From Zygnema circumcarinatum SAG 698-1b (taxonomy: Eukaryota; Plantae; Zygnematophyceae): a DNA stretch of 64,000 bases. A program made the translations under genes and the position numbers. The stretch is from NCBI GenBank assembly GCA_037447605.1, contig CM074804.1, forward strand, positions 6,239,909 to 6,303,908, written 5' to 3'. The notes under the pieces were generated by a model. That model was not told the DNA's origin. It made no database searches and saw only the letters and a list, made by a program, of their open reading frames with translations. This document shows, piece by piece, positions 43,659 through 54,085 of this stretch (the stretch's first letter is position 1; the number at the start of each line of letters is the position of its first letter).

Positions 43659-43895
43659 GCCACTTCATTCCTCCCCGAAAGGTGAAAAGTAAATGGATGC
43701 GCATCACGATTGCCAAGCAAAAGGAAGTAACAAGAGGAATGGCACCTCGCCAGGGGCGAGACCGCGCACGCCGCACCACTGCACTGGACAAACCGCCGCG
43801 GGAGTTGGACGCAAAACGTCGCACGGCCTCCGAGCACATGCCGCGGTGCCCCGCTAGCTTGCAGGGCCGCATGACGCCATGGCGAAGTGCACCCA

Positions 43896-44057
43896 GCCAA
43901 CGCCAACGCCAACGCCAACGCCAACGCCAACGCCAACGCCAACGCCAACGCCAACGCCAACGCCAACGCCAACGCCAACGCCAACGCCAACGCCAACGCC
44001 AACGCCAACGCCAACGCCAACGCCAACGCCAACGCCAACGCCAACGCCAACGCCAAC
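43896..44057. repeat. (GCCAAC)27 hexanucleotide microsatellite
   Basis: 162 bp of perfect GCCAAC units, about 300 bp upstream of the ATG at 44360. Confidence 0.98.
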
Positions 44058-44359
44058 CGTGGCCTTCCCTCGAGCACGAAGCCAAGTGGCCGGCCGGCGG
44101 ACGCCATTATTAGCCATTATGACCGTACGGCTGATCGGGCGTATCTCTGGCCGTTGGTGAAGCGCGGCGCCAGCCATGTGGGCGGACGGGCGGGCCACGT
44201 GCCGCCCCGCCGCCATCAATGCCGTGCGCGAGTGAAGGCTCGCCCGCCCCCGCGCGCTATTCCTCGCCCGCCTCCGCTCTCGCTCTCGCTCTCGCGCTCA
44301 CAGCACCTGCCGGCCGAAGCAGACGCGGTGGCCGCTGGAGCTCTGGGCGTGAGGGCACC

Positions 44360-47300
44360 ATGGCGGAGCAGGCGGACGCCGTCTTGTTTCTGCGCTGCCA
44401 CAGCGGAGAGGAAAAGGGGGAGGAGTGCACGTGGGAGGAGGTGGCGCCCGACGGGTAAGTCGCAACAGTTTCGAAGGAAACTGATCTTGAGTCAGTCACA
44501 AACAACTCAGGCCCACACATTTGGTGAAAATCTAGTCTCCTTGGCCTGCCGGAATTTGCAGCTGAAGCCAATTCTGAACCCTCGGCTGCGTGCTGCGAGC
44601 TCGAGCTCTGCGCGGGGCTGTGCAAGCAGCATTTCTGCCTTGCGTCCTTCTGCAGGCCTTGTGCAGTTTTCTACTGCTCTGCATCATGGCTCGTCCAGGG
44701 ATTGGCCCTTCATCTCTGCCCCCTGCCCGGTTTCCTCTCACTCCTGACACTGGTTTCTATTGCTGCGTCCGGGCATGTCTCGGCTCACAACCCTGCATTG
44801 AAAGGTGGCGTCCGAAGTAGTTCTAAAAGTGAGCGCAAATGAATATGTTATCTATTAGCGATTGCTATTGAGAGCTTTCATACCCTCAACTGTGAAGAGT
44901 CCCTCTGCATTACTTGGCAATCTCCTTTCTTAGAGTTGGGTCAATCTGACAGCATTACAGCTTCCCGACGCTGATTCGCCTGAAGCCTGTTTCTTTCAGC
45001 AAGCATAGTCTAGGTTGGCGTTTGTGCTCCGGGAAGCGGACTCAACGCACCGGAAAACTCTCATTTTGAATTTGTTTTTCCACTTGATTAGTTAGAGAAG
45101 AGCATGTTTGCATGGGAGGCATATACAGCATTTTGTAAGCTGCTTTTAGAGTGGCGCTGCGTTCATTTACTGCCGGGAAGCTTCCCTTGTTAGGATGAGC
45201 CGTCATCACCTTTGCTCCTCCACTAATCTGCAGAATCGCACAGAAAGTTCAGAAAGAAGATTTGACGAGGCATAGATGGCCGAGACCTCGCTTTTTGCAG
45301 GTTGCTATCCATGATTTATATCTCACAATGTCTGAGGTCGTCTGGATCAGATGCGACGTTGTCACCTGAGACTGAAGCTTTAGCATGCCATTGGTTCCTT
45401 CCGATTTATCTTCCTCTGGCAACATGCGAATGGCCTCAAAGATCCCTTTTAACTCCATTTTGTCCATATGCACAGTGAAGCGTAGACCTTCATTCTTATT
45501 ACTGAATAACACAGCAGCTACCAAGCTTCTGTGGTCCCATCAGCTAAGTCTGTCATGTCCTTTCATAGGTATGCTGCTAGTTGTAGCCTCCGAAGGCAGC
45601 AGCTGACGAGTAGGTAATCCGCGGGACTCAGATCAGCACGGTCAGAGTTGCCCAATCTGGGGTTCGTACCTCGGCTAGCTGAAACTATTTCACTGCAACC
45701 TGAACTCACAATTATAAGGACACTCTTGTCACCTGAACAACTTTATTCACACTAACATTGCGACATAAATCCTTCGCTCCAAACATGGTCCAAGTTCGTT
45801 CTGAGAGAACGACACATAGCAAGTAGAGAAGGAGAAGAGATACAACAGATGTTATTGGAAGCAGTTATGGAAGGGATTAGCAAGTCGCCATCTGGACCTC
45901 GAGCTGCAGTCAGTTCACAACACACGCGTGAACACGTATGTGCATGTTGCCTTGCGTCACGCACTGCTGCTGAATTGAATTGACGGCCTAGGAGTCGCAT
46001 AGTAAAATGGGCGCGAGGTTGGGCGTGGCTGCCAATTGCTGCAGTCTTGTCCCTCGACGGCCAACTCTGGAAGAACTTGCCGTCTCCTCCATTTCGGAGC
46101 TCATCTGCCCACTTTGCAAGCAGGTGGGCAGGGGATATTCTCTGCTTGGGAGGGGCTGTTCAAATTGCTGCCCTCAAGTGCTCTATTGGCGGTGAATTTC
46201 ATTGATGCCCAATGGCATATGAATGTCTGTCTGCCTACGCATACCAGGCATAAAGATGCTTCACAGCTCATCCCTGTCTCGCTGTGCAGGTCTTCAGCAT
46301 TGCAGTTACTGCTGCTTGCGGCGATGTCTTCTGCAGGTGCATCTCTCACACCCTAAATTTCAACCTGCTAAACGAACCGTCTTCTGTGTAGACTTCCGGG
46401 CTCACAATCTGACGGCAGCATGGGTACAGAGACTGTCTACGTGAGGAGACTCAGGCAAACGATGCCGCCTGTCCGATCTGTGAGCAGCCCTTAGAGGTAC
46501 TCCCTCTGCCCACGTTTCCTACATTACAAGAACAGCAAACCTTCTTGCAGCAGCAGTGATGGCTGTGCTCTGGGAGAGGTGCAGGCCGGCACCCCCGCGC
46601 CCTCTCGAGCAGCGCAGAAGAGGCTGGCCACCCTCCAGATGCGCTGCGAGAATGGCCTCTCGTACGACCTCCGCAAGAGGCGCTTTACGGCTGAGGGATT
46701 CCTCGCGGAAGGCTGCCCAGTAGTGGTCGCCTATTCCGACTACCATGCGCATTTGCAGGCACGGCATTACGCTTCGATTCTCCCCATGTCTTGCCATCCT
46801 TTTCTCTGCTTTAGCTTCAGATACCATTCTGTTTAACCGCGAGAAGGTTTCCCTTGTGTCGAGGATACGAATGCCCATTCGTGCTGGACTCAAAGGGCAG
46901 ACATGTGGACGGGGATTGCAGAAATGCAGTTACACCATAGTGGCGTGCGCGTATCAGGACATGGGCTGCAGCATGGCGGTGGAACGCGCTGCCTGGAAAG
47001 CGCACTGTGCAGCCTGCAATTACCGCATGGAGCTCTGCGAGTATGAGATGTTCCCCCGACCACACAGCAAATGTATGCGGCAAGAGCAGAAGAAAAGTTG
47101 TTTCCAAGCCATGGCCTGACGCGGGGCAGAGAGCGGCGTGCAGGTGCGGGCAGGACGTGGTGCAGCTCGCGAAGGAGGAGCACCGGAAGGTGTGCAGGGC
47201 TCGTTCCATGCCCTGTCCGCACTCTCAGTTTGGCTGCGTCTTTGTGGGCACACTCGCTGCCGCAGAGGAGCATCTCAAGATATGTCCGTACGAGATGGTG

Positions 47301-50300
47301 AAGATGGCTCTCTACAAGCCGGTGAGTTGTGCCCTCAATGTGCCCGGAACACGCCCTTGACCAAATTTCTGGCTGGTACGACATGTGGGTGCTTCTAACT
47401 GAAAACGGCGCGATGTGCTTTTGGAATCTCTGAGATGTGCGTAGAGCTTTACGCGTTGGTGAATGCCCGGCCGAGTGACACATGGCACGTGTGGTGAGGT
47501 CAATGGCAGGTCGTTCAGAAGGTGTACGAGGAGTGCTTGGCGGCAGCAAAATGCGAAGCTGAGAATGTGCAGTGGAACCACAGGGGTGAATCCGACGAGC
47601 TCAGGAGACAGTTGATGGATGTGAAGGAGGGGATCGTTCTCAAATTCGACGACCAGACGAAGAATGTCCCAGAAGAGTTGAGGTAACTCCTATGTGCACA
47701 CACCATGATGCTTGTACACCGTTGTAATGGTCGACGAAAATGAGGGGCGACGTCCCAAAAGAGGGACAGGAACTTGGTGCAATCCATTGTTTCACAAGGC
47801 AATAAGAAGAACAAGAAATGCGATGTAAAGAGTGACTCTTCCTGAAATTTCTTGGAAGTGATGGAGTCTGCCAAGCATTGAATCCACTGGAAGTTATAGA
47901 AATGGAAGAGAAACATCCGGGACTGGGAAAGCAATGATCGATGGCTCTGTGTGCGCCATGCAGGGTCGACATGAAGGATAAGCTGCAGAATGCTCTCGAC
48001 GTGCTCGACCTGTCCCTATCCTCACCCACGAGTTCCTCGCCCCTACCTAGGAGTGTTCCCACGTGAGTTTTCAGTTTCTTTGGCTATTGCTCTGCCTCTC
48101 CTACATGTGATGAAAGCAAAAGCAATGATTCAATTGCATTTTGTTTCGTGCAGAACCAACAGCTCGCCTTCTAGAGGAAGTCCAGGGAGGAGTCTCCCAG
48201 AGGAGAGTATATATTCCTTTGAGGAGGTGGTGGTGTTCACCGACAACTTCTCTAAAGCGAACCTTCTGGGCAAGGGCGGCTTTGGAGCAGTGTACAAAGG
48301 GATGCTCTACGGCACGCCTGTGGCGGTAAAGCGGCTGCATGAGGGGGGCAATGTGAGCGAATTTGAGTTTGAAGTGAGCGTCCTGCGAAGGATCCGTCAT
48401 CCGCACATTGTGATGCTCATCGGGTGCAACCCCGAGTCCATGTGCATTGTCAGCGAGTTCTTGGCGGGCGGCAGTCTCGACGATCGGCTCAAGGGGGCGG
48501 CCTGCTTCCCGCCGCTCGGCTGGGTGGACCGCCTCCGGATATGTGCGGAAATGGCTTCCGCACTGCTCTACCTGCACAGGAACGGCATCCTGCACCGCGA
48601 CTTGAAGCCGGCCAACGTGCTGCTCGACCAGAACAACAGCTGCAAGCTCGTGGACATGGGCCTTGCGAAGCTATTTCAGGATACCACCACTATCATGTCT
48701 CAGCCAAAGGGCACATTCGGGTAAGCCACCACAGAGCACGCTCATGGTCCTCCAAGCCCGCCTAACGGCCCCATCCCCTGACTAACGTTCCCATACTCTA
48801 ATCTGCAGATACATCGACCCCTTCCAGCTGCAAACCGGCCAGCTCTCCCGCTCCTCCGACGTATACGCTTTGGGTCTGATCATCCTGCAGCTCCTGACCG
48901 GCCATCGGCGCATCCAGGCCGTCCATCAGGTCCTGGAGGCGTGCGGGCCGGCCGCCCCGCGCCGTGACCTGGAGGTCGCGAGCGAGGTGTTCCTGCAGCG
49001 GCTGGACCCCTCCGCGGGGCGGTGGGGTCATGACCAGGCGCGGGCGGTCCTGCGGGTCGCGCTGCAGTGCGTGGAGCGGAGCAAGGGGGCGCGCCCGGAC
49101 CTGCAGGCGGAGGTGCAGCCCGCGCTCTTCCACGCGGCGGAGGGGGCCAAGGCGGCCGCCGCGCTGCTGCAGGGGAGGGCCAAGGCGGCCATGCCGAGAG
49201 GGGACGGATTTTCGGGCAGAGGGCAGGCTGATGAGGTGCAGCCCTTGCAAGGACTCGCGCACAGGGCGGGAGGGAGGAAGTTGGCGAAGACTCAGAGTGA
49301 TGGTGCAGCTGCGGCAGTAGAGAGGAATGAGGTCCCGAACAGTACTAGATGGGCCTCGCCTATGAAGGTTCGGAAACTTTTGCCTGACACGCAGCACGTT
49401 TGTCTTGCGGGTGGTGTTTCTTTGTACCGCATACGTTGCCTTTTTTTGAGGTGTGAAGGTGACACTTCACCTCACCGTCTTTTGTGTGTGACTTGGTGGC
49501 GGTGACAGACTGAGCATACAGCGCAAAAGCATAGCCGTAGCGGCCCTCAGCAGTTGTATTCATCCTCGGACTCGCGGCCCATTCCCTGCTACGATGCGTC
49601 CTTGTCGCTGTCGTCATCGACAGCGTCAGGCAGCTTCAGCTCGGACCTGGCGCAGGCCCCACCTCCTGTGAGCCTGCACTCCCAGTAGACTGCAGGAAGA
49701 TGTCGCTGCTTGTAGCTCTACTGCTCAGCTCCCATATGGAATGACTGTAAACAATAGAATGTGGTGGGAAAACGGGGAAGGAAGGACAAATATGTTTCGC
49801 TGATGCATTGTTTGAATCCCAGGTTTTCTTCACCCCTTTGTTGGCTGCTCGGCAGTGATCCTCCATGTCAAAAGGGACCGGTGGCCTAACCTCTTGGCGG
49901 AGACTGTGTGACAGAATGAAGCTTGGATCTCAAATCGCGAAAGGACTGCGAAGGCGGGAAGTTCTGAACTAGACGACGAAGGAGAGCAACAGTCACCGGA
50001 TGCAGTGGTGGGTTCTCCTGCTAGCTCACTCGACTGATATGCTGGAGATGGACTAGACAGGGATGAGGGAGAAGCCAAGGGCATGCTTTAGGGAAGCAAG
50101 GTCAGCATGTGAACAGGGGGTGCAGATTGGGCGAGAGAGCGCTCTTTGTTGGTCGCGGGACTAACTGGACTGTGTTCAACAAGCTAGTAAAAATAGCTTC
50201 TGCATTGCTAAGGACGAGCTGACATGGTGACGAGGGGGGTAAAAAGGGCAAATCAACAGCATGATCGTCGGTTACTTGATAAGTGCACTTCAATGTATTT

Positions 50301-52374
50301 GTATAACAGTAGGATTTGTAGGGAGAAAACACTTGGCCTGTGACTTCGTCACCCAAACGATCGCCAGCCTACCGCCCCATCACGCAACGCCACGGCACCG
50401 AATTGAGCACGAAACGAATTTATTCGTTGGTCAGTTTAGTTGATGTCAAATTCCAAAGGTTCCCCTATCCTTGCAAACATTTGTTAGGAAAATTTGTTCA
50501 TTCTGCCTTCCGATTCTGTCCTGCATGTGCAGGCAGTTCTTGAGGAAGTGCAGGTGCTGCGGAAGCATGCACGGAAGCAGCACGCACGCAGAGAGCACCT
50601 CAAAGCGCTCGACACGTTCGCCCTCGCCTTGGACCGTCTGCCCGCAGGACACCCCATGCGGGCGGACCTGCACAGGTGAACCCCACCCACATCTCAATGT
50701 GCATCATGAGCCTTGTACGCAAGGTTAGTTAGAGGCTCATTCATATATTGATTGATAATAGCATTCACAACCCTTGAACGAGTCTGACAAGTGCGGCGCG
50801 GGCGGGTGTGCGCAGCTGCCGGGCGGAGTGCGTGTTGGACGTGGCCCCCCTGCAGTACAGCGGCGCGGCGGTGGAGGTCGTCAAGGAGTGCACGCAGGCC
50901 CTCGCGGCGGCCCCGCCCCACGCGTGGGCGCTCATCTGCCGCGCGCACGCGTACGAGGCCCTCGGGAACTGGCGACTCGCGGAGATGGACCTGGACACCC
51001 TGCTAAGGGTAAGAGGGGGGGAATGGAAAGGGGAGGGAGGGAGGGAGGAGGGGGAGGGAGGAGGGGGAGGGAGGGAGGCGCGGGCTTCTGACAAAAAACT
51101 GGTCTTTGAAATGGGTGCAGATTGATCCCAACAATAGCAGGGCCTTGGAGCTTCGACGCACTTTGCAGGCGGAGCGGTTGCGGGCAACAAACTCTGCACA
51201 GTTGCCCTCCTCAATGCTGGACGATGCAGACTCCCTTGCTGTTAGTGTGAGGCTCCATGCCCTACGTCCTCAACTCAACTTTCCTTCATATCTGTACATG
51301 GTTCAGAGAGCTTATCGAGGAAAGGTTTGGGGGGTATCAGGACATTGGAGGCGTTCACTTTGGTGATACTTGCCAGGGCTGTGGGGTGACACCTATCTGC
51401 GGTCTTCTCTTCAGATCATTCCGGTGAGCTCCAAACCGCATTGTTTGTGCAGCAGTGTACCTACCAGCTAGTGGGGGAAAAGGGTCACTTCATCGGTAGT
51501 AGTAAGGTTGTTGATGGAAGCGAGAGGTGACAGCGACAGCATGAAATGCCCCGCCGCCGCTGATGTGCCTTCATACTGAATGTACAAACGTGTTTGGGTA
51601 CTCCTGAGGGTGCAGGCGCCGGGATTTTCAGCTTTGCAGATCCTGCAGGCTCAAGTGGAGCTCTAAATCAGAGGAGTTTGAGGAGGTGGCACCACCAGTA
51701 AGTGGTTGAGCAAGTGTTGCTTCCTGTCTTTTCTCCACAGTGATGCAGCTTTCAAGGCAATCCCTGGACTAGCAGATTCAGGTCTGCAATCTCAAATGGT
51801 TGGCTCCTGCGGAGGGGGCTTTAGTCCTTATCAACCTAACCAAAGAAATTTCTTGCTATTCTCCCTTGAATCGCTGGACATGCAGGAGAACTCCAATGCT
51901 CTCTTCCTGTACTCCCTTGGCTACGGCCATGGTGCATGCATTATCCGCAACAAGCGGGACACCATTCGTCTCCTGCAGAAAGCCTCTCAGCGTGGTCACC
52001 CCTTGGCGAAGACAGCGCTTGGCCATGCCTATCGCCAGGGAGATGGCGTGGATCAGGACGATAATGCTGCTGCAAAGTGGCTGAGCTTGGGAGCCACCAT
52101 GCCAGACGAGCAGTATGAGCTCGGGCGGCTGTACAAGGAGGGCAAGACCGTGAGCAAGGACCTGCAAGAGGCGGTGCGCCTCCTCTCCCTGGCGGCTGTG
52201 CAGGGCCACGCGGGGGCCCGCATGGAGCTCGCGCAGTGCTACGCAGAGGGCCGCGGAGTGGCGCCCGACAGTGAGGAGGCCGCGCGGCTCTTCCGCCTGG
52301 CGGCAGTTGCAGCAGAGGCCGACCATATGAAAGCGCAGCTCAAGCTGGGGACATCTGTGGCGGGAAAAAAGTGA
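44360..52374 (+). CDS. Multidomain RING finger - TRAF-type zinc fingers - coiled coil - RLK/Pelle (RLCK-IX-like) Ser/Thr kinase - TPR - Sel1-like repeat protein. The RING-to-kinase part is well supported; the TPR/Sel1 joins are less certain, and the gene may extend to ~52835.
   Basis: Phase-consistent exons: 44360-44454, 46045-46123 (CPLCKQ), 46290-46336 (CGDVFC), 46430-46496 (RDC...CPIC), TRAF fingers 46585-47320 (GCPVVVAYSDYHAHLQ-KCSY; CAYQDMGC...KAHCAAC; CECG...EEHRKVC; CPHSQFGC...EEHLKIC), coiled coil 47510-47682, kinase 48154-49130 (LGKGGFGAVYKG, VAVK, HRDLKPANVLLD, DMG, GTFGYIDP, SDVYALG, RPDL), TPR 50531-51200 and Sel1 51740-52374. Confidence 0.75.
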
Positions 52375-54085
52375 GTTCATATAAATGGCGGCTGGCACTT
52401 CAATCCAGTGAGGCTGTGGCTCCTGCTGTCCCGCGAGTCAGAGAATTCTGAATTTATCTTATGAGGCTGCTTCTATGTGGATAAGCAGCCTCCTCCCAGG
52501 TTTTCAATGAAGCACTCTAGCAGCACGATGCAGGAGGGCAGTGTCTTCTTGACGACCTGTATGCTTTGGAAAAGTCCAGCCAGCATAGGTGAGCGTACTG
52601 TCGGGACTGCCGAGAGGCTCCGCACGTTCGGGACCTGCTGAATGAGGATGTTCAACATGGCTATTCTTTTGCAGCCCTGATTTGGGCAGTAGATGTACAC
52701 TATTGTAGGCGGGCAAATGGCCGGCAGGAAATGCTTAGCGATTTCAGCATGTTGGATAGAGACCATCCTCATTCGGTTAGGGACTTAATTCAAAGGATTA
52801 AAGGTGTACAACTGGCGTCGCATTCTTTTTGTATGATGCAATAAAAAATTGTTTCACTTTATTTGCAATGTTTCAGTAGGAGCTTGTTGTTTCAATTCGG
52901 GTTCGGGTTTGTAAAATGGAAGGTGAGCCGATATCGCTGCCGGTGAGCCTATACTTCAGTAAGTAGTTTTTGGCTCTGCCAGCGTTTGCTTGCTGTCTGA
53001 GCGTGCCAGCGACCAGAATTCTTTCCAGGCGAGTGAACGCCCTCATAGCATGTTTTCTATACCAGCTTTGATTTCTCAGAGCTCTTGAATGGTGGCTCAG
53101 TAGTTCAGTCTCTCTCGCTTTCAGTTGACAAAACTTAACAACGAATGGACAGCAGGACCGAAAGAGAAGCGATCGGCTGAAAACCCATCAATGATGAGAC
53201 AATGGTCACGAAGTTAAAGATGAGTGAAATGAATGACAGATACGCTCGAGTTGCCGTCACCTCTTAATCAGCGATGATCAGTCTCCACACCTCCCGTATA
53301 CTCCACATGTAACACAAAATTCCGCGCGGGCTGCGAGTAAGCAAATCCGAGGACAATGCGCAGGACTGCGTCATTCCAATGCAAGCGCATCGGCAACCGT
53401 TGGCCGCTACCGTTAATGGCAATTGTCATCAGACAAAGAGTGCTTTAACCTTTACAAAAGTGTGTCGGGCCAACTGGTTCAGGACTGGTCGGTGTTCACA
53501 CGCTGCCAGTTGCGCACGCAGTCGTTGGAAGTACGGGGGATTCTCACACACAGGAAAGCCCGCTCACGGAACCAGGAAAGGCCGCTCACGGAACCACGAA
53601 AACAGGGAGGCACTCGAAGGCATTCGCCACATCGGAGACATGAAGCCCATCCTCTGCGAGTCACTGACATGACCATGCCAACTCTCCATGTGGAAACTGC
53701 AGACTAACATAAGAATTACACATCGTTTACATGATTTTTGGATTTTTTTTCTGTAACTTCAATTTTGGTTCACGCAGACTCGAGGACCTGGTCCTGCTTG
53801 CGAGCTGCACAGTCTTCAGGCGACGTGAATGACACGCCCGCTGGAGCAGCGGATTTCTTCACAGGTTGCATACGGGGAAAACGGCACTTCTGAAAGCCCC
53901 GCAGGCCGTTGGCCGAACCCAGGCGGCCCACCAAAACCTTACCTCACCACCTCTCCAAAAGCTCAGCTTCAATATGGAGGATGCCCCGCACGACTCACGG
54001 TGAACTGTGGCGGACGGGTATCCACCGAATCTCCACATTCTCAAAACTGGATCCAAACTCCTTAATTCACAGCAGGTCCAATACT

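What the first reader, a model, noticed from the sequence alone, without database searches (positions are those of the whole stretch)
44360..49367. TRAF-like RING/zinc-finger E3 fused to an IRAK/Pelle-type kinase: a candidate one-protein ubiquitin-kinase signalling module in a green alga
Seen in sequence: canonical splice sites join, in phase, a C3HC4-like RING (C-P-L-C...C-G-D-V-F-C-R-D-C...C-P-I-C), about four TRAF-type fingers (C-x11-H-x3-C pattern), a coiled coil and a kinase. The kinase's C-lobe (RLDPSAGRW...ALQCVE...RPDL..EVQPAL) looks like RLCK-IX kinases. Established: RING + TRAF zinc fingers + coiled coil is the N-terminal architecture of animal TRAF6 (and of SINA/Dictyostelium TRAF-like proteins); TRAF6 acts directly downstream of IRAK/Pelle kinases in Toll/IL-1R signalling; plant RLKs/RLCKs are the Pelle/IRAK sister family; land-plant RLCK-IXb kinases are fused to U-box E3 domains. 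Inference: this could be a Rosetta-stone fusion or an independent E3-kinase fusion acting in algal immunity or stress signalling. I do not recall this architecture being described.
Basis: partly seen in the sequence, partly recalled or inferred. Interest (0 to 1): 0.85.

Follow-up and report, generated by a model that had tools for sequence, protein, structure and literature searches.

The report
TRAF-type RING ligase fused to kinase
One expressed algal gene really does encode a TRAF6-like RING/zinc-finger ubiquitin-ligase module joined to a plant U-box-kinase-type (IRAK/Pelle family) kinase. It runs on into TPR and Sel1 repeats. This is a rare, apparently undescribed variant of the known plant "kinase plus E3 ligase in one protein" theme, and its function is untested.

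Summary
**Observation: confirmed.** Spliced transcript contigs from four studies join the RING, four TRAF-type zinc fingers, a helical region and the kinase into one open frame starting at ATG 44360.

- One intron is GC-AG, not GT-AG.
- The RING has Asp where the His ligand normally sits.
- The gene does not end at 49367. It continues through two confirmed exons and probably seven more, to a stop at 52374. That gives about 1,160-1,190 aa, ending in TPR-like sequence and four Sel1 repeats.

**Family assignments**
- In a tree, the kinase falls with full support inside the RLCK-IX clade (plant and Closterium U-box kinases).
- The best solved-structure matches are plant receptor kinases, then IRAK4 and IRAK1.
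- The RING and zinc-finger part matches TRAF6 best, by both sequence and fold. It has no MATH domain, so it is not a TRAF family member.

**Distribution:** only three other proteins, all from unannotated transcriptomes, share the architecture. Their C-terminal modules differ.

**Literature:** I found no description of this architecture.

**Verdict:** a new variant of a known kind (compare PUB-VI/RLCK-IXb and KEG). It most likely acts as a self-contained kinase-E3 scaffold. The immune or Rosetta-stone reading is untested. Earlier notes of this scan report other domain-swapped RLCK-IX kinases in the same genome.

The parts
44281..44454 (+). Exon 1. The 5' end of the longest transcript contig is at about 44281, and the ATG is at 44360. 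It encodes a conserved N-terminal motif ([FY]LR.H.G).
   Evidence: joint 44454/46045 in X1 and X7, and the X1 contig reaches about 44281; this N-terminus is conserved in P0153, P0031 and P0151.
46045..46496 (+). Exons 2-4 (46045-46123, 46290-46336, 46430-46496). They encode the PRRPT..ELA motif and the RING. The RING is residues 53-91, coded between 46106 and 46481, of C3-D-C4 type.
   Evidence: Joints. Pattern. Homologue P0031's RING matches TRAF6 at 1.9e-9. Pfam zf-C3HC4 scores 23.6 bits on P0153 against a 21-bit cutoff.
46585..47321 (+). Exons 5-7 (46585-46758, 46922-47040, 47144-47321). They encode a TRAF-like RING-to-finger linker and four TRAF-type zinc fingers (residues 117-241). Intron 46759-46921 is GC-AG.
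   Evidence: Joints. Pfam zf-TRAF, zf-TRAF_2 and Sina_ZnF. Finger pattern. Alignment to homologues. Foldseek best hit is the TRAF6 N-terminal domain.
47510..48062 (+). Exons 8-9 (47510-47682, 47964-48062). They encode an alpha-helical region, possibly a coiled coil, followed by an S/P-rich linker.
   Evidence: Joints. The AlphaFold2 model of homologue P0153 shows helices at 242-276, 283-304 and 310-332, with pLDDT 74-93. Coiled-coil pairing itself was not tested.
48154..49367 (+). Exons 10-11 (48154-48720, 48809-49367). They encode the protein kinase domain (about 48220-49140) with GKGGFG, VAVK, HRDLKPAN, DMG, GTFGYIDPF and RPDL. An Ala/Gly-rich tail follows.
   Evidence: Pfam Pkinase 1e-31. 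Best PDB matches are plant receptor kinases, then IRAK4 and IRAK1. Tree. Motifs.
49509..50007 (+). Exons 12-13 (49509-49667, and 49915 to a predicted end at 50007). They encode a Ser-rich linker, and the frame stays open.
   Evidence: Joints 49367/49509 and 49667/49915 appear in all four runs. Frame. The donor at 50007 is predicted, not seen.
50533..51697 (+). Predicted exons 50533-50675, 50816-51008, 51121-~51246, ~51311-51423 and 51616-51697. They encode TPR-like helices and a Cys-rich stretch that resembles a decayed ZZ finger.
   Evidence: The sites are canonical and keep the frame. The intron near 51246/51311 is ambiguous. ESM Atlas features for 50817-51008 are TPR-like at 0.97. There was no Pfam hit on the single exons and no read evidence was examined here.
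51886..52374 (+). Predicted last exon, with four Sel1 repeats and the stop codon at 52372-52374.
   Evidence: Pfam Sel1 2.3e-24 in 4 stretches. Homologues P0153 and P0151 carry Sel1 arrays after the same kinase. The lengths of the X1 and X7 contigs are compatible with a 3' end near 52790-52900.

Best explanation
**What it is.** A single expressed gene of 19 exons. The boundaries through the start of exon 13 (49915) are confirmed by transcript contigs; those after 49915 are predicted. It encodes a cytosolic protein of about 1,180 residues.

**Domain order**
1. A conserved N-terminal motif.
2. A TRAF6-type RING with Asp in the His-ligand position.
3. Four TRAF-type zinc fingers.
4. A helical region.
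5. An RD-type kinase of the RLCK-IX clade (IRAK/Pelle group).
6. A Ser-rich linker.
7. TPR-like helices.
8. Four Sel1 repeats.

**Shown.** The gene structure, the domain identities, the clade of the kinase, and the conservation of the RING-finger-helix-kinase core in three other transcripts.

**Inferred mechanism.** The protein works as a self-contained kinase and ubiquitin-ligase scaffold:
- The TPR and Sel1 repeats bind a partner or client.
- The helical region and the RING-finger module pair two chains, as in TRAF6 and PUB33.
- The kinase phosphorylates itself or the partner and tunes the RING's E2-dependent ubiquitin transfer.

In evolutionary terms this is an RLCK-IX kinase in which the usual USP head and U-box tail are replaced. 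A TRAF-type RING/finger E3 takes the head, and swappable repeat or other modules take the tail.
For: **One gene**
- Twelve introns are removed in contigs from four studies, and the frame stays open.
- The same collinear core is found in P0153, P0031 (46-47% identity over about 650 residues) and P0151.

**RING and fingers**
- Best PDB sequence match is TRAF6 at 1.9e-9, covering the RING, the linker and the fingers.
- Best Foldseek match is the TRAF6 N-terminal domain, 1.9e-5.
- All seven Cys ligands are kept. Ligand 4 is Asp in three members and Cys in P0151, and both residues can bind zinc.
- The Pro and the hydrophobic residue of the C-P-[LIY]-C E2-contact loop are kept.

**Kinase**
- All catalytic motifs are present.
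- It forms a clade with land-plant PUB/USP kinases and Closterium kinase-U-box proteins, supported 100/99 against 14 other RLK subfamilies.
- It shares the D[VM]G, YIDP and LDP.AG.W..RPDL signatures.

**Precedent.** PUB33, of the same clade, has both kinase and E3 activity, regulated by autophosphorylation. It self-associates, and AlphaFold2 predicts pairing through its helical domain (10.64898/2026.02.10.704836).

**Sel1.** Pfam 2.3e-24.
Against: - No activity, binding or oligomer state was measured.
- His-to-Asp in the RING could weaken zinc binding.
- The AlphaFold2 model has low confidence over the RING (pLDDT below 50).
- The kinase has DMG in place of DFG, and Phe in place of the APE glutamate, which could lower its activity.
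- The splice joints after 49915 were not seen in reads, because the laid stretch ended at 50000. The link to the TPR/Sel1 part therefore rests on frame-keeping splice sites, contig lengths and homologues.
- One intron near 51246/51311 is unresolved.
Confidence: 0.6

Rival explanations
1. It is a kinase with a structural zinc module. The RING (His replaced by Asp) and the fingers have lost ligase activity. They serve only for pairing or for binding partners, so the protein is a scaffolded RLCK rather than a dual enzyme.
For: - Asp replaces the His ligand in three of the four members.
- Pfam RING scores sit near or below the cutoffs: P0031 20.8 bits against 21; P0153 23.6 against 21.
- The RING has low confidence in the AlphaFold2 model.
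- The TRAF6 residues after the first Cys pair (L74, M75) are not kept (alignment).
Against: - All seven Cys ligands and their spacing are conserved over 33-47% overall identity.
- Ligand 4 is always a residue that can bind zinc, Asp or Cys.
- The Pro and the hydrophobic residue of the E2-contact loop are kept.
- TRAF6 is the best match over both the RING and the linker.
Confidence: 0.2
2. It is an E3 ligase with a weak or regulatory kinase-like domain. The kinase acts mainly as a docking or switch domain, as some RLCK-IXb members and the ZRK pseudokinases do.
For: - DMG replaces DFG.
- The APE glutamate is Phe here and His in P0151 and P0131.
- Two Arabidopsis RLCK-IXb members are predicted pseudokinases (10.64898/2026.02.10.704836).
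Against: - The Gly loop, the VAVK lysine, HRD with the catalytic Asp, the Asn, and the metal-binding Asp are all present.
- D[VM]G is the normal form in the whole RLCK-IX clade, and PUB33 of that clade is reported to be an active kinase.
Confidence: 0.1
3. The fusion is an artefact: two or three neighbouring genes (RING/finger, kinase, TPR/Sel1) are joined only by read-through or by contig assembly.
For: - Logan contigs can bridge neighbouring genes.
- The joints beyond 49915 were not inspected (one search covered the window only up to 50000).
Against: - For the RING-to-kinase part, every intron is removed in frame in four independent studies.
- Three transcripts from other sources encode the same collinear protein.
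- For the tail, P0153 and P0151 also carry Sel1 repeats after this kinase in one open frame.
Confidence: 0.05

Closest known systems
PUB-VI / RLCK-IXb proteins of land plants (e.g. Arabidopsis PUB33, PUB35)
   Same: - Same kinase clade (tree 100/99) and the same signature motifs.
- A helical region lies before the kinase.
- A ubiquitin-ligase domain of the RING/U-box fold sits in the same chain.
- PUB33 is reported to have both activities.
   Different: - The ligase module is N-terminal here, and is a zinc-binding TRAF-type RING with four TRAF fingers. In PUB-VI it is a C-terminal U-box.
- There is no USP domain.
- The tail is TPR/Sel1 repeats.
Animal TRAF6 (RING, TRAF zinc fingers, coiled coil, MATH)
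   Same: - It is the best sequence match (1.9e-9) and the best fold match (1.9e-5) of the RING-linker-finger module.
- The order of RING, fingers and helices is the same.
- TRAF6 works with IRAK kinases, which are the animal sisters of this kinase family.
   Different: - There is no MATH/TRAF-C domain. A kinase and repeats follow the helices instead.
- The RING His ligand is Asp.
- It has four fingers, and the first carries a long insert.
- Identity is only about 24%.
KEG (KEEP ON GOING) of land plants: RING-HCa, kinase, ankyrin, HERC2-like repeats
   Same: An N-terminal RING, then a kinase, then a repeat array, all in one chain (cited in 10.64898/2026.02.10.704836).
   Different: [quoted passage not shown]
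- It has no TRAF fingers.
- Its repeats are of a different kind.
- It was not compared by sequence here.
Other domain-swapped RLCK-IX-like kinases of this genome and its relatives (kinase-Sel1, kinase-PH-WD40, kinase-4HB-U-box-Sel1)
   Same: - Same kinase subclade (99/99).
- The same habit of exchanging flanking modules (P0046, P0131; scan notes s1-321709, s1-321685, s1-406442).
   Different: Those proteins lack the RING/TRAF-finger head. Some of the database entries may simply be 5'-truncated, as P0064 is relative to P0151.

Membership tests
TRAF family (TRAF1-7 type) | C-terminal MATH/TRAF-C domain | tested here: not met
   Pfam scans found no MATH hit on the full-length homologues P0153, P0031 and P0151, or on the window's exons. 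In the window protein, the kinase follows the helical region.
TRAF family (TRAF1-7 type) | TRAF-type zinc fingers (C-x(n)-C-x11-H-x3-C; PF02176) | tested here: met
   There are four fingers. PF02176 scores 39.3 bits on P0153 and 37 bits on P0031, against a 27-bit cutoff. On the window's single exons it scores 25.6 bits, and zf-TRAF_2 scores 27.5 bits.
TRAF family (TRAF1-7 type) | N-terminal C3HC4 RING like that of TRAF6 | tested here: inconclusive
   The spacing fits the RING consensus, but Asp stands at the His ligand. TRAF6 is the best PDB match. Pfam zf-C3HC4 scores 23.6 bits on P0153 and 20.8 bits on P0031, against a 21-bit cutoff. Zinc binding and E2 binding were not measured.
TRAF family (TRAF1-7 type) | Coiled coil (TRAF-N) after the fingers | tested here: inconclusive
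   The AlphaFold2 model of P0153 shows three helices (242-332) at pLDDT 74-93. No oligomer prediction or coiled-coil scoring was run.
RLK/Pelle-IRAK kinases, RLCK-IX clade | Kinase domain groups with RLCK-IX (PUB/USP kinases) rather than with other RLK subfamilies | tested here: met
   In a maximum-likelihood tree of 46 kinase domains, the clade with land-plant PUB/USP kinases and Closterium kinase-U-box proteins is supported 100/99. Fourteen other RLK subfamilies lie outside it. The best named relatives are PUB33/35/51/52-like, at 40-49% identity. The outgroup sampling was limited.
RLK/Pelle-IRAK kinases, RLCK-IX clade | Clade signature motifs (D[VM]G, GT..YIDP, LQ..TG, LDP.AG.W...RPDL) | tested here: met
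   Seen in the alignment, and absent from the four outgroup kinases shown there.
PUB-VI / RLCK-IXb | C-terminal U-box | tested here: not met
   Pfam found no U-box after the kinase in the window's exons or in P0153 and P0031. Sel1, TPR-like or LURP-one modules stand there instead.
PUB-VI / RLCK-IXb | N-terminal USP domain | tested here: not met
   There is no PF00582 hit. The RING and TRAF fingers occupy the N-terminus.
Sel1-like repeat proteins | Tandem Sel1 repeats (PF08238) | tested here: met
   Pfam Sel1 2.3e-24, 85.4 bits against a 30.7-bit cutoff, in 4 stretches on 51886-52371. The join of this exon to the kinase is predicted, not seen.
KEG-type RING-kinase | Ankyrin and HERC2-like repeats after the kinase; a kinase outside RLCK-IX | tested here: not met
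   There are no ankyrin or HERC2 hits, and the kinase lies inside RLCK-IX. KEG itself was not in the tree.

The most novel reading that the evidence does not exclude
The RING-TRAF-finger-helix-kinase core is an old streptophyte signalling unit in which a TRAF6-type ligase and an IRAK-family kinase act in cis. The Sel1 (or LURP-one) tail senses a ligand and drives oligomerisation. This would be a one-chain counterpart of the animal IRAK-TRAF6 relay, and evidence that this kinase-ligase partnership is older than, or arose in parallel to, animal innate immunity.
Probability: 0.1. Interest if true: 0.85.

Novelty: new variant of a known kind. Interest (0 to 1): 0.55.

Why it matters
- **Module exchange in RLCK-IX.** The RLCK-IX kinases are the one plant kinase clade that habitually carries its own ubiquitin ligase. 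This gene shows that the ligase module can be exchanged for a TRAF-type RING and finger array at the other end of the chain.
- **A test case for kinase-ligase coupling.** It offers a natural way to ask whether coupling between kinase and ligase depends on the ligase type and its position.
- **Link to IRAK-TRAF6.** It places a TRAF6-like module and an IRAK-family kinase in one polypeptide. That makes a functional link between these two families testable outside animals.

Tried and rejected
1. **Start at ATG 46007 (MGARLG..CC, a lipidation-like start).** Rejected as the main start. The joint 44454/46045 in X1 and X7 puts it inside intron 1, and the exon-1 peptide is conserved in the homologues. 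It remains possible as a minor alternative first exon (X2 contig 45870-46125).
2. **Donor at 47049/47050.** This was my first model. The contigs show 47040/47041 instead.
3. **Stop at 49500 after reading through 49367.** Rejected, because intron 49368-49508 is removed in all four runs.
4. **The search for homologous proteins with the RING-finger region of P0031.** It found only P0031 itself. The word filter missed even P0153, so a blank from that tool is weak evidence.
5. **The exhaustive search with the kinase exon.** Its ranking was led by many-kinase gene models. Only five clusters exceeded 55% identity.
6. **Pfam on the single exons between 49509 and 51697.** No hits.
7. **Paper searches.** Searches for RLCK-IX plus TRAF, zf-TRAF plus RLK, TRAF-type zinc finger plus RLCK/Sel1, and the run accession SRR8128904 found nothing relevant. 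The Zygnema genome paper and the NRE survey do not mention this architecture.
8. **The search of earlier findings by sequence with P0151.** Blank, which means nothing for this tool.
9. **Other copies in the window.** A tblastn of six relatives found no hit outside 44000-52500.
10. **The organism.** It was not identified.

Full report
**Observation.** I read 43800-50000 and built a first exon model from the reading frames and splice sites. I then looked for runs that hold the stretch. Seven runs from four studies hold 56-64% of its sampled words, roughly the share that my exon model makes up of 46000-49500.

Laying the contigs of four runs from four studies on 44100-50000 gave pieces with no mismatches. 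These pieces skip twelve introns, so the runs are cDNA-derived. The confirmed exons are:

| Exon | Coordinates | Note |
|---|---|---|
| 1 | ~44281-44454 | ATG at 44360 |
| 2 | 46045-46123 | |
| 3 | 46290-46336 | |
| 4 | 46430-46496 | |
| 5 | 46585-46758 | followed by a GC-AG intron |
| 6 | 46922-47040 | |
| 7 | 47144-47321 | |
| 8 | 47510-47682 | |
| 9 | 47964-48062 | |
| 10 | 48154-48720 | |
| 11 | 48809-49367 | |
| 12 | 49509-49667 | |
| 13 | starts at 49915 | 3' end not seen |

Joined, these exons give an open frame of 772 codons with no stop. Two of my own guesses were wrong and were corrected by the reads: a start at 46007 and a donor at 47049.

**Domains in the window protein.**
- The RING is residues 53-91: C-x2-C-x11-C-x-D-x2-C-x2-C-x11-C-x2-C. 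This is the RING spacing with Asp at the His ligand.
- Four fingers end in C-x11-H-x3-C, at residues 156, 186, 211 and 241.
- On single exons, Pfam gives Pkinase 1e-31, zf-TRAF 2e-05 and zf-TRAF_2 5e-06.
- The kinase has GKGGFG, VAVK, HRDLKPAN, DMG, GTFGYIDPF and RPDL. The catalytic residues are all present, but the DFG Phe is Met and the APE Glu is Phe.

**The gene goes on.**
- Introns 49368-49508 and 49668-49914 are removed in all four runs, and the frame stays open.
- Beyond 50000 I had no reads.
- Canonical sites that keep the frame give exons 49915-50007, 50533-50675, 50816-51008, 51121-~51246, ~51311-51423, 51616-51697 and 51886-52374, which ends in the stop. The total is about 1,184 residues.
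- One intron, near 51246/51311, has several possible site pairs.
- The last exon holds four Sel1 repeats (Pfam 2.3e-24).
- Exon 50817-51008 has TPR-like features in the ESM Atlas (0.97; a lead only).
- The X1 contig (4,046 nt) and the X7 contig (3,586 nt) extend 1.7-1.8 kb past exons 11-12. Under this model they end near 52790-52840, beside an AATAAA at 52840. That is compatible with the model but does not prove it.
- A first-stage note on the same window (s1-409453) had also seen TPR and Sel1 sequence in frame.

**Relatives.**
- An exhaustive HMMER search with the kinase exon found only five clusters above 55% identity.
- P0031 (1,256 aa, from a EukProt transcriptome) has the RING, TRAF fingers and kinase and a LURP-one-related tail. 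It is collinear with the window protein over 633 residues at 46% identity.
- P0153 (1,174 aa, EukProt) has the RING, TRAF fingers, kinase and a Sel1 array with eight Pfam-scored stretches. It is 47% identical over about 650 residues.
- P0151 (1,137 aa) is encoded on intron-free 4.5-kb transcript contigs of SRR8128902 and SRR8128908. It has the same order of RING, TRAF fingers, kinase and eight Sel1 repeats, at 33-37% identity. P0064, from SRR8128904, is its 5'-truncated form.
- A profile of the full-length pair P0153 and P0031, searched in the 5.8-billion-protein collection, returned no further protein with TRAF or RING domains among 304 hits.
- A profile of the four N-termini found no other member among the 380 kinase relatives fetched.
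- The window holds no second copy.
- The four N-termini share the [FY]LR.H.G and PRR.T..ELA motifs, all the RING Cys and all four fingers. RING ligand 4 is Asp in three members and Cys in one.
- The splice joints seen in reads, including the GC-AG one, fall exactly where the homologues are continuous.

**What the parts are.**
- *RING and fingers, by sequence.* The best solved-structure match of this part (P0031 residues 30-300) is TRAF6, at 1.9e-9. The alignment runs through the RING, the RING-to-finger linker and the fingers. TRAF5, BRCA1 and TRIM21 follow.
- *RING and fingers, by fold.* An AlphaFold2 model of P0153 residues 1-360 is confident over the fingers and three helices (pLDDT 74-93) and poor over the RING, with mean pLDDT 64. 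Its best Foldseek matches are the TRAF6 N-terminal domain (1.9e-5) and the TRAF6-Ubc13 and TRAF5/6 structures. ESM Atlas neighbours are RING plus zf-TRAF clusters.
- *No MATH domain.* None is present in any member.
- *Kinase, by sequence.* Its best solved matches are plant receptor kinases (a lectin-type kinase, LysM-type receptor kinases including CERK1, then BAK1, a kinase labelled only 'Protein kinase', and FERONIA), apart from one EGFR entry at rank 6. IRAK4 and IRAK1 follow. Its best named relatives are U-box kinases PUB33/35/51/52 of land plants and kinase-U-box proteins of Closterium, at 40-49% identity.
- *Kinase, by tree.* A maximum-likelihood tree of 46 kinase domains puts it in a clade (100/99) with those proteins, apart from 14 other RLK subfamilies. 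Within that clade, an algal group (100/96) splits in two. One branch holds the RING-TRAF kinases together with the kinase-Sel1 and kinase-PH-WD40 proteins (99/99). The other holds Closterium and P0168 kinase-U-box proteins.
- *Kinase, by motifs.* The clade's motifs are shared: D[VM]G, YIDP, LQ..TG and LDP.AG.W..RPDL.

**How it most likely works (inference).** Land-plant RLCK-IXb/PUB-VI proteins are USP, helical domain, kinase and U-box. PUB33 is reported to have both kinase and ligase activity, regulated by autophosphorylation, and to self-associate. KEG is another plant RING-plus-kinase protein (preprint 10.64898/2026.02.10.704836).

By analogy, this protein is a kinase-ligase scaffold:
- The TPR/Sel1 tail binds a partner.
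- The helices and the RING-finger module pair chains.
- Kinase and RING regulate each other and modify the bound client.

The His-to-Asp RING, DMG and the lost APE Glu are reasons for caution. The rival readings are a structural RING or a weak kinase. A fusion artefact is excluded for the RING-to-kinase part.

**Comparison and novelty.**
- It is not a TRAF family member, because it has no MATH domain.
- It is not a PUB-VI member, because it has neither U-box nor USP.
- Its kinase is a member of the RLCK-IX clade.
- It resembles PUB-VI and KEG in principle, and TRAF6 in its head.
- Six paper searches and two targeted readings found no description of the architecture.
- Scan notes report other module-swapped RLCK-IX kinases in this genome (s1-321709, s1-321685, s1-339064, s1-406442, s1-409411). 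This gene is thus one more product of a lineage-specific shuffling family, and the scan has met the family before on other DNA.
- I rate it a new variant of a known kind, with moderate interest.

**Limits.**
- The organism was not identified. One scan note calls it a streptophyte, and the kinase tree is compatible with that.
- The species behind P0153, P0031 and P0151 are unknown.
- The word-based protein searches are insensitive.
- The tree's outgroups were taken from my hit lists.

Noticed in passing
window 43896-44057: A perfect (GCCAAC)n microsatellite of about 27 units lies roughly 225 nt upstream of the transcript's 5' end.
   Followed up: no
window 44455-46044 (intron 1): Unspliced low-depth contigs from three runs lie inside the 1.6-kb first intron (for example 44707-45015 and 45036-45738 in X3). 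The region holds no convincing ORF. This could be pre-mRNA, a separate non-coding transcript, or a repeat.
   Followed up: partly
window 45870-46125: An X2 contig runs unspliced through the acceptor at 46044/46045. It contains an in-frame ATG at 46007, giving MGARLGVAANCCS.., a myristoylation/palmitoylation-like start. This could be an alternative first exon producing a membrane-anchored isoform.
   Followed up: partly
window 47322-47583 and 48063-48153: Run X3 shows an alternative acceptor at 47584, which shifts the frame. It also retains the 91-nt intron 48063-48153, which carries a stop. Both are minor, probably unproductive isoforms.
   Followed up: no
window 46759-46921: A GC-AG intron is supported by all four runs. 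It splits the H-x3-C of the first TRAF finger.
   Followed up: yes
window 51311-51423 and 51616-51697: The predicted exons carry CQGC...DFQLCRSC, which looks like a ZZ-type finger that has lost its middle Cys pair. There was no Pfam hit on the separate exons.
   Followed up: partly
window 51020-51080: A GGAGGG-rich low-complexity run lies inside the predicted intron 51009-51120.
   Followed up: no
P0031 (EukProt transcript), C-terminus: The same RING-TRAF-kinase core carries a LURP-one-related (PF04525) domain in place of Sel1 repeats, so the tail module is exchangeable.
   Followed up: partly
window 48815-48824 (kinase P+1/APE region): The APE glutamate is Phe here and His in P0151 and P0131. 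P0153, P0031 and the PUB kinases keep Glu.
   Followed up: partly
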